Source of the DNA: Selaginella moellendorffii
Lineage: Eukaryota > Plantae > Lycopodiophyta
DNA length: 64,000 bases
Direction: 5' to 3'
Assembly (NCBI RefSeq): GCF_000143415.4
Contig: NW_003314323.1
Coordinates: 124,001 to 188,000 of the forward strand
The notes beneath the pieces were generated by a model, which searched no databases, was not told the DNA's origin, and worked only from the letters and a program-made list of their open reading frames with translations. The position numbers were made by a program, and so were the translations under genes. Shown here piece by piece: positions 9,150 to 17,405 of this stretch (its first letter is position 1; each line of letters begins with the position of its first letter).

Positions 9150-9461
9150 ATTTTTAAACAACTCGTTGTGGGCCTTGTCACCAAGCCGCTGGGGAAGACA
9201 TAATTGCCATTACATAATTGCCACCAACTATAGAGAATATCAGTGTTTTGTATTGGCTATGTTTTTGTTTGCTCACAGTGTTTTTATTTCCCTTTGGTTC
9301 TAGAAATTAGTCTGGTTTGTTTGACCGGAACAGTCAACGGCGAGCCGGCATAGTCAACGGCAAGGAGAGGTACAGTCAACAGCATGGATATCTCAAGTTG
9401 ACACCAACATAAGAGTTGAAGTTTGTATCCATTCCATTCAATTGTTAAAGTTTAGAAGAGC

Positions 9462-13755: not shown

Positions 13756-14243
13756 CAGCCCAGCCATTGTTGTTCTACTTCGTCTCGTCTATGTATAAGG
13801 AACAAAAGAAAAAGTTAAAGAGGTGGTGGCCACTGGTTAGTGGGTGCATTTTCAAATGATTTTTTAAAAAGGCAAAAAGATCTCACGAGATTTGTCTGGC
13901 TAGGCCAAAACAAAAGGCCTGTGGAGGCACGTGCTTGAATTGGCAGGCCTCCGAGAAGCTTCTTCTGGTGCTGCAGGGAACCTTCGCCAGCTCATTCTCG
14001 CCCCTATCATGATGAATGCACCTGGCCAAGACGTTACTTGCATTCCACTCCACTCCAAGTTTAAATTCTCGAAGCAATCAACGTGATCAAAGTTACGTTG
14101 GCGATATTACTTTCATCCGGTCAAAGCCACACTAGTATATATAACCTGTTTGGCAGCGGGGGTTTTTATCCATACTCTTCTCCATCATTACTTATCTCTC
14201 TCTCGCTCTCTTTGTGTTCTTCCGAGCTCTATCGATCGATTCG

Positions 14244-14528
14244 ATGGAAATCTCGAGCAATCTGCGTGATGGGTCCTCGGCCGCGGCAGTGATCGAGCTT
14301 CTCAAGAAGGAGCAGCTCAAGAATTCGAGGGCCAAGCACAGGGTGCCCAGAAGGGGGCAAATCAAGGCCGCCATCGCGGCCTCCATGGCGCACTCCATCG
14401 CCTCAGCATTCTCCGAGATCAAGCGGCACCTCACGCCCGCTCCCTCGCGATGTCACTCGTCGTGTGGATCCTCGCTCAGCCGATCCAGCTCCACCGGATC
14501 TCACGACTCGTCGACCTTCAGGCTGTGA
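14244..14528 (+). CDS. Small intronless protein (94 aa) of an uncharacterised plant family with a PRRGQIKAxIA motif
   Basis: GC-rich coding bias, TATA-like tatatataa at ~14135, motif HRVPRRGQIKAAIAASMAHSI, Ser-rich tail. Confidence 0.7.
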   Translation: MEISSNLRDGSSAAAVIELLKKEQLKNSRAKHRVPRRGQIKAAIAASMAHSIASAFSEIKRHLTPAPSRCHSSCGSSLSRSSSTGSHDSSTFRL

Positions 14529-14865
14529 TGGAGTGATCTATAGCAAGATACAAGATCATCAAATTGGGAAATTCTCTTTCTCCAAATCGTCTCCAGCATC
14601 TCCAGAGATTGTGCTCGAGGCCGGGTCGTGATCTCGAGCCATGGCTCCAGCACAAGAACAGAGATGTTTGCATCGCGCAGCAAAAATGATCCATCCAAAG
14701 TCTTGTTCATAGCTTGATCAAAAGGATTTGCAAAGTCAATAAATTTGGTTGACCAGAATATGCGTTGTCTTTGTTTTTGAATATTCCTTGTTCCAACGTG
14801 TTTACTCATTTGAATGAAATGTTTTGGCGCTCACGAGACTCTAGGGCAGCAAGAAAGAAGATGCG

Positions 14866-15849
14866 ATGATCGCCAGGGCGAAGGCGCTGCTCAAATCCTG
14901 CTACAAGGGAAAGGTTTCCAGGGATTTCCAATCGATCGCAGCTTCTTTCATCTTCTTTCATCGATCTAAGGTCGAAATCTTTCATCCTGTTTCTCGCAGC
15001 TCGATGCGGCCCTAGAGCCAGCCGTAGAGCAGCCGCCGCAACCAGGGATTCAAGCGATGCCTGAGATTTCCACGTTGCGAGGGCTTCCTTTCCTGATTTC
15101 CGCAGCATTCGTGGTGAAGATGGTCCAGGGCACCCTCTTTGGCGACGACAAGGTAATCGAGGTGAAGATGAATCCTTTCCTTGGCCAGGAGGACTACCTG
15201 GTGTACAAAAGGTTCGAGCAAGCATTCCTCGGCGCTGCTAGTGCCCAGCCAAAGCTCGGTAAGAGGATGAGATTTTTGAGATTATTTCTCGACCAATTTT
15301 ATAAACTTTGATCAATGTGTTTGCAGCCAAGATCACGGCTGCCGATTTGGAGAAGTCTACAGGTTTTCAGTACCACAAGTTGAGCGACTGGATTCTCCTC
15401 CTCTACCATGGCACTCCGAGCACCAACATCTCTTCCATCCTCGAGAGTGGATTCGCCACGGTTGCCGCTCGGAGTAAGAACAGATACTGGTTTAGTGGCG
15501 ACCCATTCGTTTGCACCTCTTACGCCGACGAGGACTCCAGCGAGTACTACCTCCTTGCGGTTTTGGTGCTGTATCCAGAGAAGGTAATTTCTCGTAAATC
15601 TTTTTCTCTCATGTGACCGATTCATAGATGGGAGATGATGGTACATACGCGGTTACAAAAGAGTTCCAGAGCCACATTCTACCGGTCGCTACTGTAAGGA
15701 TCCAACGTGCCACTGCGAACAATACAGGTATAGACATGTTCTCATATGAATCTAGTCATGGTTTTTTATTAGGTGTGATCCAAGCTCCTCTGTCGAAGAC
15801 TTACCTGGAGCTTCTGCGAATTTTACAATCACGATCACCAGTGAAGTGA
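14866..15849 (+). CDS. Stand-alone PARP-like ADP-ribosyltransferase-domain protein, 5 exons (14866-14913, 15000-15258, 15327-15583, 15628-15727, 15773-15849), ~246 aa
   Basis: LLYHGT..NISSILESGF, YWFSGDPFVCTSYA, YLLAVLVL, GTYAV...HILPVATV correspond to ARTD core strands. All introns are GT-AG and in phase. Confidence 0.7.
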
Positions 15850-15999
15850 TGGTTTCCTGGAGGTATTATCTTCGTATTTTTGTTGAGTCCCCCAGGTATT
15901 GAATTTTCAAAACGCTGCAGGTAGGTACCGAGCTCGGAAATGCTCATGATCAACTGTTTGCTACAAAAAAAACTCTCAAAAGCTGGAAAATGAGGATAA

Positions 16000-17405
16000 T
16001 CAAAGCTCAAGTTTGGATTCAAGGAACTCGCAAATCTTCGGCATTGCTTCAACTGTCGTGTACGAGTGGTCTCGGTGCCTGCTGACAATTCGATGCAGTT
16101 GTACTCTGCGTTGCTCGCGCTCGAAATCGTTCCCAGGTACTGCCACAGCATCTCAGCACGCTTGTCTTCCTGCCTGTGCGAGTGGACAAATAATCCACAC
16201 AGGAGTAAGGAACACTTGTTCTTCTTTGCCCCGCTGACTGAATGTTTGGTGTCTTGGTCTTTTGTTTCTTGTTGTTGTTTATCAGGACTTTGATCCAAGA
16301 CAGAGGCATTCTTGATGAGTGACCCAAGTGGAGCAGAACTTGAAACCCAGTGTGCAGAGTTTTGCACCACAAATTTTCGAGCAATGCTCGAAAGTCTCTG
16401 TAGGATCACCACCATAAAAACCATACATATGCAAAGCTTATGCTTACCTCTAGGCGATGAGACGAATCAGAAAAAGCAATGCATTTTAGCCTTTGGAGAA
16501 CTTCCGACTCTGAGGCAAGACAAAGGGTTTGAGTAGAATGGTATCCAGATTGAACATAAAATAAAAATAAGAATTTGTGTAACCTCGCTGTCTGATAAGC
16601 TCACAAGCGTTGTATCCACCGCAAGAATGTGCAACAAAAGCGAGCTTTTTTGCAGGAATGTTCATGCAAATGTTATCCCAAACACATATAATATGATTTG
16701 AGCGTGTATCACTGCCTGAAATTTTTATTCCCTGCAAAGAGCTCAATAATATTTAGTACTAGGAAGTTTTCTTTACCTCTTCTGGTGAGTTATAGTTAGG
16801 ATTAAGGACTAAAACAGCAAAATCTCGCTTATGTGCCCATTCTGCATGGACAAGAAGAAAATATGGCTTTTTTCCCTTGTAATATAAGCTTACCAATAGA
16901 AGGTAGAACGCTACCAATTAGAATAGAATCCTGAATTTAAGAAGTTATTTGACCAAAACTCTGAATAATCATACTTACATTTATGCAAACTTTGTGAGAC
17001 CATAAACCTGCCCTGCAAAAGTCAATATTACAACTAAAATTTTTGTGTATTAGCTGTATCTCACTTGATTTTTCCTGCTCCACAAATGCAAATAAGCAGC
17101 ACTTTAGAAATTGCTACATTAGAAGACAGAAATACAGGACATTTAGCCTGGCCCTCTACAGATAATTGTTCCAGTGGAAGCTCTAGCTTTGTCATTCCAT
17201 ACTTATCAACCATGAGATCTTGCACAATTTTTGCTATAATCTCCCTAACTTGGTCATAGTATTGTTATAGAATTTTGTTTTCAGAGTAATTGAAAATAGA
17301 AATCATTACCTGATTACTAGCATCATGTTTGAATGGAGCTGCACTTATATCACAAATTTGAAAGCTTTCCTCATCAATGATGTAGCCCAACTTCTCAAGC
17401 TTCAT
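16000..17405 (-). pseudogene. FAM172/Arb2-like alpha/beta-hydrolase-fold gene, probably decaying
   Basis: LEKLGYIIDE, ICGAGKIKAGLWSHKVCIN, VLVLNPN, HIICVWDN, AFVAHSCGG, IAFSDS, WVSSSAPL, LSAGT. First acceptor reads AA (17265-17266) and a 1-nt frameshift lies at ~16070. Confidence 0.75.

What the first reader, a model, noticed from the sequence alone, without database searches (positions are those of the whole stretch)
14866..15849. Stand-alone minimal PARP-like ADP-ribosyltransferase, unlike canonical plant PARP1-3 or SRO/RCD1
Seen: an intact 5-exon, ~246-aa gene with YHGT, a second aromatic/Tyr motif (YWFS..P..CTSYA), a hydrophobic LLAVLV strand and a terminal YAV...HILP strand. There are no Zn-finger, WGR, regulatory, WWE or RST domains. 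Known: ARTD enzymes use an H-Y-E triad, and replacement of the Glu (here GTYAV, giving H-Y-T) is typical of mono-ADP-ribosyltransferases. Inference: this may be an uncharacterised plant mono-ART or NAD-consuming defence enzyme, and it is the best candidate for new biology in the window.
Basis: partly seen in the sequence, partly recalled or inferred. Interest (0 to 1): 0.75.

Follow-up and report, generated by a model that had tools for sequence, protein, structure and literature searches.

The report
Spikemoss-only short stand-alone PARP-like gene
This is a real, weakly expressed gene found only in the spikemoss Selaginella moellendorffii; it encodes a 211-residue protein that is little more than a shortened, highly diverged PARP-type (NAD-using) domain, and whether it is an active enzyme is unknown.

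Summary
The window is Selaginella moellendorffii scaffold GL377627.1. Its first exon and first intron are not supported. The transcript runs unspliced through that intron, so the coding sequence starts at ATG 15057 and ends at TGA 15847-15849, giving 211 aa rather than about 246. A further intron lies in the 3'UTR.

The gene is already in databases (EFJ14401.1/D8SM02; allele EFJ25996.1/D8RP93), and UniProt auto-names both alleles 'PARP catalytic domain-containing protein'. Both public gene models are wrong at the 3' end.

Sequence evidence for a PARP domain is weak:
- The Pfam PF00644 match is below threshold (19-21 bits against a cut-off of 26.7).
- The ESM Atlas model of the allele has only PARP catalytic domains as structural neighbours (TM 0.57-0.63).
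- Every weak PDB hit belongs to the ADP-ribosyltransferase superfamily.

A full HMMER scan of 1.84 billion proteins found relatives only in S. moellendorffii: one 184-aa paralog (27-30% identity, buried in a chimeric PPR gene model) and one decayed fragment. H-G-T is conserved between the paralogs. The triad Tyr position is Trp, and the Glu position is Thr (Arg in the paralog).

There is no WWE, RST, WGR or zinc-finger domain. I found no evidence for a defence role. Earlier notes of this scan list other compact PARP-like genes on other pieces of this genome. I could not tell whether any of them is this gene.

The parts
14884..15056 (+). Transcribed 5' leader.
   Evidence: The X1 transcript contig is continuous over 14884-15257, and raw reads of X11/X12 cover 14862-15015 with no joint. 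The first start codon in the main frame is at 15057.
15057..15258 (+). Coding exon 1 (residues 1-67 and the first base of codon 68), starting MPEISTLRGLPF.
   Evidence: The ATG aligns with the paralog's ATG (MQPRRGLSY). The exon matches the family profile at E 2e-28.
15259..15326 (+). Intron of 68 nt, GT..AG, phase 1. Its position and phase are shared with the paralog's only intron.
   Evidence: Joint seen in the X1 contig and in 3+1 raw RNA-seq reads of X11/X12. Paralog intron at L001 8983-9027.
15327..15583 (+). Coding exon 2: the core of the PARP-like domain. It carries H95-G96-T97 (15407-15415), W122 (15488-15490) and Y133 (15521-15523).
   Evidence: Translation. Pfam PARP E 4e-4, 20.3 bits. 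Family profile E 5e-37.
15584..15627 (+). Intron of 44 nt, GT..AG.
   Evidence: Joint in the X1 contig. The GenBank model EFJ14401.1 uses a different acceptor that this contig does not support.
15628..15727 (+). Coding exon 3: the GTYAV strand, with T159 (15643-15645) at the position of the catalytic Glu, followed by the HILPVATVRI strand.
   Evidence: The LP.A motif is conserved with the paralog.
15728..15772 (+). Intron of 45 nt, GT..AG. It would read through in frame if retained.
   Evidence: Joint in contigs of X1 and X5.
15773..15862 (+). Exon 4: the last 25 codons, the stop TGA at 15847-15849, and 13 nt of 3'UTR.
   Evidence: The stop is conserved in the other haplotype.
15863..15920 (+). 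3'UTR intron of 58 nt, GT..AG.
   Evidence: Joint in contigs of X1 and X5.
15921..16299 (+). 3'UTR exon. The 292-aa allele model EFJ25996.1 wrongly treats it as coding, and it is antisense to the tail of the neighbouring Arb2 gene model.
   Evidence: X1 contig and plus-strand-only reads. The A-run length differs between haplotypes, which shifts the frame, and the stop codon is conserved.

Best explanation
This is a genuine, weakly expressed Selaginella moellendorffii gene (CDS 15057-15849, 4 coding exons, 211 aa). Its product is essentially one shortened, highly diverged PARP-type (diphtheria-toxin-class, ARTD) ADP-ribosyltransferase-fold domain with no accessory domains. It belongs to a tiny family seen only in this species: this gene, one 184-aa paralog, and one decayed fragment.

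Proposed working (inferred, not shown):
- The strand-helix motif LLLYHGT..N..SIL..G forms the nicotinamide/adenosine-ribose side of an NAD+ pocket. W122-F123 and Y133 supply the aromatic walls.
- There is no catalytic Glu (Thr here, Arg in the paralog), so it cannot build poly(ADP-ribose).
- At most it transfers a single ADP-ribose, as the H-Y-hydrophobic PARPs do, or it only binds NAD+/ADP-ribose.

My split: PARP/ART fold about 0.8; NAD+ binding retained about 0.45; real transferase activity about 0.25.
For: A real gene:
- A spliced 1201-nt transcript with four GT..AG introns, plus-strand reads only, and transcript-sized shares of the stretch in runs of several studies.
- The ORF and stop are intact in both haplotypes.
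- The paralog ORF is intact in both haplotypes and shares the intron position and phase.
- The coding sequence diverges less between haplotypes (7/636) than the introns (4/157) or the 3' flank (20/607).

PARP-type fold:
- Pfam PF00644 is the only family hit for this gene's alleles and the only ADP-ribosyltransferase family hit for the paralog model, over the same profile region (E 3e-4 to 3e-3).
- A family profile searched against PDB sequences returned 36 hits at E<10. All are ADP-ribosyltransferase superfamily members: PARP1, PARP3, PARP12, Tpt1 and DarT.
- All ten listed structural neighbours of the ESM Atlas model of the allele are PARP catalytic domains (PARP12-like, SRO2, RCD1-like), at TM 0.57-0.63 over 145-171 residues.
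- Language-model feature neighbours of both this protein and the paralog domain include PARP-only clusters.
- UniProt auto-names both alleles as containing a PARP catalytic domain.

Pocket under constraint: H95, G96, T97, N101, S104, I105, E107, G109, W122, F123, E140, Y141, L171, P172 and A174 are invariant between paralogs that share only 27-30% identity. The decayed copy has HST and an internal deletion.
Against: - Every sequence match to PARP is below the curated threshold or non-significant, and covers mainly one roughly 35-residue motif.
- AlphaFold2 gave no usable model (pLDDT 31 and 43), and Foldseek on it returned noise.
- The Atlas model is only medium confidence (pLDDT 0.58, pTM 0.55). 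It may itself be driven by the same motif.
- Two pocket positions are not conserved between paralogs (Y133 to His, T159 to Arg), and the triad Tyr is Trp.
- The segment that carries strand 4 and the acceptor loop in other PARPs seems to be missing.
- Allelic pN/pS is high but rests on few changes (5 non-synonymous against 2 synonymous here; 4 against 3 in the paralog).
- Expression is low (depth about 1-2 in 12% of a 10.8-Gb library).
Confidence: 0.58

Rival explanations
1. It is a catalytically dead pseudo-PARP. The fold is kept as a scaffold or as a binding module for ADP-ribose, NAD or a protein partner, as in plant RCD1/SRO or human PARP13, and it has no transferase activity.
For: - No catalytic Glu in either paralog, and the Tyr position is Trp.
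- Y133 and T159 are not conserved between paralogs.
- The acceptor-loop region is apparently deleted.
- Allelic pN/pS is relaxed-looking.
- SRO2- and RCD1-like models are among the nearest structural neighbours.
- AtRCD1 was shown not to bind NAD+ (Jaspers 2010, PMC2848248).
Against: The known inactive plant and human members have lost the triad His (RCD1 L-H-N and PARP13 Y-Y-V in Jaspers' Table 2). Here H-G-T is invariant between paralogs of under 30% identity, and it is lost only in the decayed copy.
Confidence: 0.28
2. It is not an ADP-ribosyltransferase at all. On this reading it is a lineage-specific orphan protein whose HGT..SIL..G stretch resembles the PARP/Tpt1 motif by chance.
For: - All sequence matches are sub-threshold and short.
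- AlphaFold2 did not fold it.
- The paralog domain alone hit only an unrelated response regulator in the PDB, at E 0.013.
Against: - All 36 weak PDB profile hits are ADP-ribosyltransferase superfamily members.
- All ten listed Atlas structural neighbours are PARP domains, aligned over 145-171 residues and not just the motif.
- The downstream elements (aromatic-F-S/T strand, EY-hydrophobic strand, x-Y/F-h-V strand, LP.A strand) come in the PARP order and are conserved in the paralog.
Confidence: 0.1
3. It is a truncated descendant of the plant RCD1/SRO family (PARP Clade 2) that has lost its RST and WWE domains. On this reading it is not a separate lineage.
For: - Plant SRO2-like and RCD1-like clusters are among the best structural neighbours (TM 0.62-0.63, the longest alignments).
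- Jaspers 2010 mentions two further truncated, unassigned putative SROs in S. moellendorffii.
Against: - No RST or WWE hit at E<=10.
- The SRO signature motifs around the three triad positions (W-x-G; G-x-G-[IV]-[YH]-L-S; P-K-N-Y-[IV]-V-W), including those of SmSRO1a, are not matched by LYHGT, NRYWFSG and DDGTYAV.
- A full HMMER scan with the allele reached no SRO at E<=1e-3.
Confidence: 0.1
4. It is a diverged Tpt1/KptA-type RNA 2'-phosphotransferase.
For: - The LYHGTP..N..SIL..G stretch matches archaeal Tpt1 chains as well as it matches PARPs (E 0.18-0.5).
- Its size (211 aa) is similar to that of Tpt1.
Against: - No Pfam PF01885 hit at E<=10.
- The match is 21 residues long.
- I see no N-terminal Arg-His pair of the Tpt1 catalytic tetrad in the sequence (that tetrad is recalled from memory).
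- All Atlas structural neighbours are PARPs.
Confidence: 0.03

Closest known systems
Mono-ADP-ribosylating PARPs of the H-Y-hydrophobic type (human PARP7 and PARP10-15; Clade 3 of Citarelli et al. 2010, PMC2964712)
   Same: - H-G-T on strand 1, followed by the N...I...G helix.
- A non-Glu residue at the third triad position.
- A proline-containing final strand.
- PARP12-like models are the commonest structural neighbours of the Atlas model.
   Different: - No WWE, macro or zinc-finger domain.
- Trp instead of the triad Tyr.
- No G-x-G before that strand.
- Clade 3 is reported to have no plant members.
- Phylogenetic placement was not tested.
Plant RCD1/SRO proteins (PARP Clade 2; Jaspers et al. 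2010, PMC2848248)
   Same: - A plant PARP-like domain with a non-canonical triad.
- SRO2- and RCD1-like models are among the best structural neighbours.
- Type-B SROs are also short, at about 300 aa.
   Different: - No RST domain and no WWE domain.
- It keeps the triad His that RCD1 has lost.
- The SRO motifs around the triad are not matched.
Clade 6 PARPs (PARP6/8/16-like; in plants reported only from green algae and a moss)
   Same: - A PARP domain that lacks the Glu, with no other known domain.
- One Atlas feature neighbour is a PARP16-type cluster (ARTD15_N).
   Different: - Clade 6 proteins have a conserved region N-terminal to the PARP domain and C-terminal extensions.
- No sequence-level link was found.
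Other compact PARP-like genes of S. moellendorffii noted by this scan (for example s1-337392, s1-334498, s1-405267, s1-395611, s1-411679)
   Same: The same genome, unusually short PARP-type domains, low expression, and absence from published plant PARP surveys, according to those notes.
   Different: - Several of them carry a WWE head, which this one does not.
- None was reached by the HMMER scan with this protein at E<=1e-3, so any relationship is distant or absent.
- I could not compare the sequences.

Membership tests
PARP catalytic domain (Pfam PF00644 / PROSITE PS51059) | Score at or above the Pfam gathering threshold (26.7 bits) | tested here: not met
   19.4-20.7 bits for the exon and both alleles, and 17.7 bits for the paralog. 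UniProt's automatic name implies that some other rule fired, but I could not run that rule.
PARP catalytic domain (Pfam PF00644 / PROSITE PS51059) | ADP-ribosyltransferase (split beta-sheet) fold | tested here: inconclusive
   The ESM Atlas model (pLDDT 0.58) has only PARP domains among its ten listed neighbours, at TM 0.57-0.63. My AlphaFold2 models were unusable (pLDDT 31 and 43).
PARP catalytic domain (Pfam PF00644 / PROSITE PS51059) | H-Y-E triad, or H-Y-hydrophobic in the mono-ARTs | tested here: inconclusive
   His is present and conserved (H95). The Tyr position is W122, with Y121 beside it. The Glu position is T159, and Arg in the paralog. Positions were assigned by motif spacing against PARP1 numbering recalled from memory, not by a structure.
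PARP catalytic domain (Pfam PF00644 / PROSITE PS51059) | NAD+ binding and ADP-ribosyl transfer | not testable with these tools
   This needs recombinant protein.
RCD1/SRO (PARP Clade 2) | C-terminal RST domain (PF12174) | tested here: not met
   No hit at E<=10 in the 292-aa allele model or in the exons. RNA shows that the protein ends at 15849.
RCD1/SRO (PARP Clade 2) | SRO-type motifs around the triad positions | tested here: not met
   Compared by eye with Additional file 2 of PMC2848248, including SmSRO1a.
Canonical PARP1-3 (Clade 1) | WGR and PARP regulatory domains, plus the catalytic Glu | tested here: not met
   No Pfam hit other than PARP. The Glu position holds Thr.
Tpt1/KptA RNA 2'-phosphotransferase | PF01885 match and the Arg-His-Arg-Arg tetrad | tested here: not met
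   No PF01885 hit at E<=10. Only a 21-residue HGT-motif match to Tpt1 chains, at E 0.18-0.5.
Clade 3 mono-ART PARPs | Grouping with PARP7 and PARP9-15 in a catalytic-domain phylogeny | not tested
   The session's tools returned no PARP reference sequences, and all protein searches returned only Selaginella proteins.

The most novel reading that the evidence does not exclude
The family is an active, previously unrecognised class of intracellular plant mono-ADP-ribosyltransferase (or NAD+-cleaving enzyme) confined to spikemosses. It would use an H-W-x pocket on a minimal PARP core. It would also have been kept next to an Arb2/FAM172-type gene at both paralogous loci because the two act together.
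Probability: 0.15. Interest if true: 0.6.

Novelty: new member of a known kind. Interest (0 to 1): 0.35.

Why it matters
Published surveys place land-plant PARP-like proteins in only three groups: PARP1-3, RCD1/SRO, and a PARP16-like clade reported in a moss (PMC2964712, PMC4245714). In 2010 no plant mono-ADP-ribosyltransferase had been isolated or predicted (PMC2848248).

A stand-alone PARP-like gene that keeps the NAD-binding His, in a lycophyte and outside the SRO architecture, adds to the picture that early-diverging land plants carry more ADP-ribosylation-type genes than the model angiosperms show. It also gives a small, easily expressed protein on which to test for activity.

The practical results are modest. 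Both public models of this gene, and the PPR-fused model of its paralog, need correction. The candidate is weaker than first proposed because of its sub-threshold homology, altered triad, low expression and restriction to a single species.

Tried and rejected
- AlphaFold2 on the allele protein alone (pLDDT 31) and on the three-sequence family alignment (pLDDT 43). Both models were unusable, and Foldseek against the PDB with the second returned only noise (TM about 0.1). I did not run further fold searches on these models.
- Word-index protein searches with exon 3, with the allele core, and with the family alignment. They found only the gene's own records.
- Scans of metagenome and viral contigs with the family alignment. 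No relatives were found.
- A PDB search with the paralog domain alone. The only hit was an unrelated response regulator.
- The GenBank 164-aa model, which uses a different acceptor for the third coding exon. The X1 transcript contig does not support that acceptor.
- The 292-aa allele model. Its last 77 residues come from splicing around a stop codon that is conserved in both haplotypes. RNA keeps that stop, and the extension is frame-shifted by an A-run difference in this haplotype.
- The Gnomon PPR-PARP-like-PPR proteins as a true fusion. The paralog has its own ATG and its own stop, and the model needs a 2-kb intron. I treat the fusion as probably chimeric. RNA for that locus was not examined.
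- A search for papers naming the gene's accessions found none.
I sent the window's spliced model to search tools exon by exon, by reference only. I did not submit the joined protein anywhere. In its place I used the database's own records P0001 and P0002, which a search returned. In scripts, exon coordinates were concatenated only to count codons and allelic changes.

Full report
**Where we are.** The window is identical, with 0 mismatches over 12,641 bases, to Selaginella moellendorffii scaffold GL377627.1 of assembly GCA_000143415.2.

**The observation.**
- LLLYHGT, RYWFSGDPFVCTSYA and LLAVLVL in 15329-15583.
- GTYAV...HILPVATV in 15628 onward.

One call of read laying on 14400-16700 gave the transcript structure. 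A 1201-nt contig of run X1 lies on 14884-15257, 15326-15581, 15626-15725, 15771-15860 and 15919-16299. After the tool's stated cut shifts, the GT..AG introns are 15259-15326, 15584-15627, 15728-15772 and 15863-15920.

Support for the individual introns:
- The first also has 3+1 raw-read joints in two RNA-seq runs of 2026.
- The third and fourth are also in a contig of run X5.
- All reads have the first mate on the minus strand. In a standard stranded library this means a plus-strand RNA.

The contig runs straight through it, reads cover it, and no joint is reported. Unspliced, the ORF from ATG 14866 stops at 15013-15015. The first start codon of the main frame is ATG 15057, which is also where both database models start.

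The stop TGA at 15847-15849 lies inside the fourth exon, 13 nt before the last intron, so that intron is in the 3'UTR. The coding exons sum to 636 nt, or 211 aa.

**How the spliced model was searched.** The joined protein was not submitted anywhere. The exon-3 search returned the gene's own GenBank/UniProt record P0001 (EFJ14401.1, D8SM02, 164 aa). Its 90% cluster also holds P0002 (EFJ25996.1, D8RP93, 292 aa), from the other haplotype scaffold. I used these stored records as stand-ins for the spliced product.

Both records are partly wrong:
- P0001 uses an acceptor for the third coding exon that the transcript does not show.
- P0002 splices around the stop codon into 77 extra residues. That stop is conserved in both haplotypes and is retained in the RNA. 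The extension is frame-shifted in this haplotype by an A-run of 8 instead of 10.

**Is it PARP-like?**

Sequence evidence is consistent but weak:
- Pfam PF00644 is the only family hit for the exon and for both alleles. The E-values are 3e-4 to 8e-4 and the scores 19-21 bits, against a gathering score of 26.7. The match covers the His strand and the following helix.
- The paralog hits the same part of the same model on its own, at E 2.7e-3.
- A profile of the family searched against all PDB sequences gave 36 hits at E<10. Every one is an ADP-ribosyltransferase-superfamily protein: many PARP1 constructs, PARP3, PARP12, an archaeal Tpt1 and DarT. The best E-value is only 0.16.

Structure evidence is mixed:
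- The ESM Atlas holds its own model of P0002 (pLDDT 0.58, pTM 0.55). All ten rows of its structural neighbours are PARP catalytic domains (PARP12-like, macro-PARPs, plant SRO2 and RCD1-like), at TM 0.57-0.63 over 145-171 aligned residues spanning residues 1-208.
- Feature neighbours of both this protein and the paralog domain include clusters of small PARP-only proteins.
- My own AlphaFold2 runs failed (pLDDT 31 and 43), and Foldseek on the better one gave noise. The fold therefore rests on one medium-confidence predicted model plus the motif order.

UniProt's automatic name for both alleles, 'PARP catalytic domain-containing protein', shows that the PARP label is already in the databases. I put the probability of a PARP/ADP-ribosyltransferase fold at about 0.8.

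**Relatives.** A full HMMER scan of 1.84 billion representative proteins with P0002 found four proteins at E<=1e-3:
- The gene's own record.
- Two repeat proteins that match only the spurious C-terminal extension or residues around it.
- P0004 (XP_024519991.1, 1488 aa, S. moellendorffii), whose residues 564-737 align to residues 7-182 at 27-30% identity.

P0004 and its allele P0007 are Gnomon models with PPR repeats on both sides. At the locus (L001), the homologous part is a two-exon unit with its own ATG (8784) and its own stop (9381-9383). It codes for 184 aa and is intact in both haplotypes. A 2-kb model intron separates it from the downstream PPR part. Its single intron sits at the same position and phase as the window's 15259-15326 intron. 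I therefore read it as a stand-alone paralog swallowed by a chimeric model.

About 6 kb away, on the other strand, lies a decayed third copy. It reads LKFLWHST...GDEDRFTV and has an internal deletion. The family profile finds no further copy in the window. Word-index searches and scans of metagenome and viral contigs found nothing else. As far as these collections show, the family is confined to S. moellendorffii.

**Active site.**

Conserved between the two paralogs:
- H95-G96-T97, N101, S104-I105, E107, G109 and R116.
- W122-F123, D137 and E140-Y141.
- K153, D156, V162 and E165.
- L171-P172 and A174.

Using PARP1 numbering from memory (H862, Y896, S904, Y907, E988), the spacing gives these equivalences:
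- W122 falls at the Y896 position, because the W-F-S/T strand matches Y-F-A.
- Y133 falls at Y907, 11 residues further on. It is His in the paralog.
- T159 falls at E988. It is Arg in the paralog.

The triad is thus H-W-T here and H-W-R in the paralog.

Against mono-ART PARPs as I recall them, the stretch between strand 3 and the 'Glu' strand is about 25 residues shorter. Strand 4 and the acceptor loop therefore seem to be missing.

The invariant H-G-T across very diverged paralogs, lost only in the decayed copy, argues that the NAD-side of the pocket is under selection. The changes at the other positions argue against robust transferase activity. Allelic differences are few and uninformative:
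- This gene has 5 non-synonymous and 2 synonymous changes (pN 0.010, pS 0.014).
- The paralog has 4 non-synonymous and 3 synonymous changes.
- The coding sequence is less diverged between haplotypes than the introns and the 3' flank.

**Comparison with known plant families.** No WWE, RST, WGR, PRD or zinc-finger domain is detected.

The SRO active-site motifs in Additional file 2 of Jaspers et al. 2010, including that of the Selaginella SRO SmSRO1a, do not resemble LYHGT, NRYWFSG or DDGTYAV. That paper mentions two further truncated, unassigned putative SROs in this species. I cannot tell whether they are this gene.

The PARP surveys I could read describe only three groups for land plants: Clade 1, Clade 2, and Clade 6 in a moss. 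They state that Clade 3, the mono-ART PARPs, has no plant members. A 2025 plant PARP phylogenomic paper, as far as its text could be searched, does not mention Selaginella or such genes. No paper holds the gene's accessions.

**Function.** Nothing in the context suggests defence. The neighbours are a pseudouridine synthase gene, a Tti2-domain gene and an Arb2-domain gene.

My best reading is a lineage-restricted, minimal PARP-fold protein that probably still binds NAD+. At most it is a mono-ADP-ribosyltransferase, and a catalytically dead scaffold is the main rival.

**Verdict.** The gene and the PARP-like reading hold. The gene model needed correction, the homology is faint, and the protein is already auto-labelled. 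Activity and any defence role are unsupported. Interest is moderate to low. Earlier notes of this scan list several other compact PARP-like genes on other pieces of this genome.

Noticed in passing
window about 16302-17405 (minus strand); L001 4085-5738 (minus); L004 1222-2593 (minus): An Arb2/FAM172-type gene lies next to the PARP-like gene at both paralogous loci. The Arb2 copies are 50-64% identical in tblastx pieces. The arrangement differs: tail-to-tail in the window, head-to-head with a PPR gene between them at the paralog locus. This could be an old two-gene duplication or a functional link.
   Followed up: partly
L001 6001-13688 (XP_024519991.1) and L004 3001-11013 (XP_024517979.1): The Gnomon models of 1488 and 1500 aa join a PPR gene, the 184-aa PARP-like paralog and a second, similar PPR gene. 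The paralog has its own ATG and stop, and the model needs a 2-kb intron in a genome whose introns are about 50 nt. The model is probably chimeric.
   Followed up: partly
L001 15041-15301 (minus strand): A decayed third copy of the PARP-like gene, with HGT changed to HST and the helix and second strand deleted. It is in inverted orientation, 6 kb from the paralog.
   Followed up: yes
window 14400-14760 (plus strand): A highly expressed plus-strand transcript (depth 270 falling to 10 in run X11) ends about 120 nt before the PARP-like transcript starts. It shows roughly 45% allele ratios at 14439, 14455, 14613, 14620 and 14634, so both haplotypes are expressed. No gene is annotated here in the record's gene list, and ORF 14214-14528 has no Pfam family.
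   Followed up: partly
window 15801-16424 (minus strand): The annotated 404-aa Arb2 gene model ends in a 207-aa minus-strand ORF that overlaps the PARP-like gene's last coding exon and its 3'UTR. This ORF has no Pfam hit, and the two RNA-seq runs show only plus-strand reads there. The tail of that model may be wrong, or the two genes may overlap at their 3' ends.
   Followed up: partly
window 15920-15921, 15964 and 16071, compared with L002: In the 3'UTR the two haplotypes differ by a 2-nt deletion at the 3'UTR intron acceptor, an A-run of 8 against 10, and a 1-nt insertion. The X1 transcript contig carries a third combination of these alleles.
   Followed up: no
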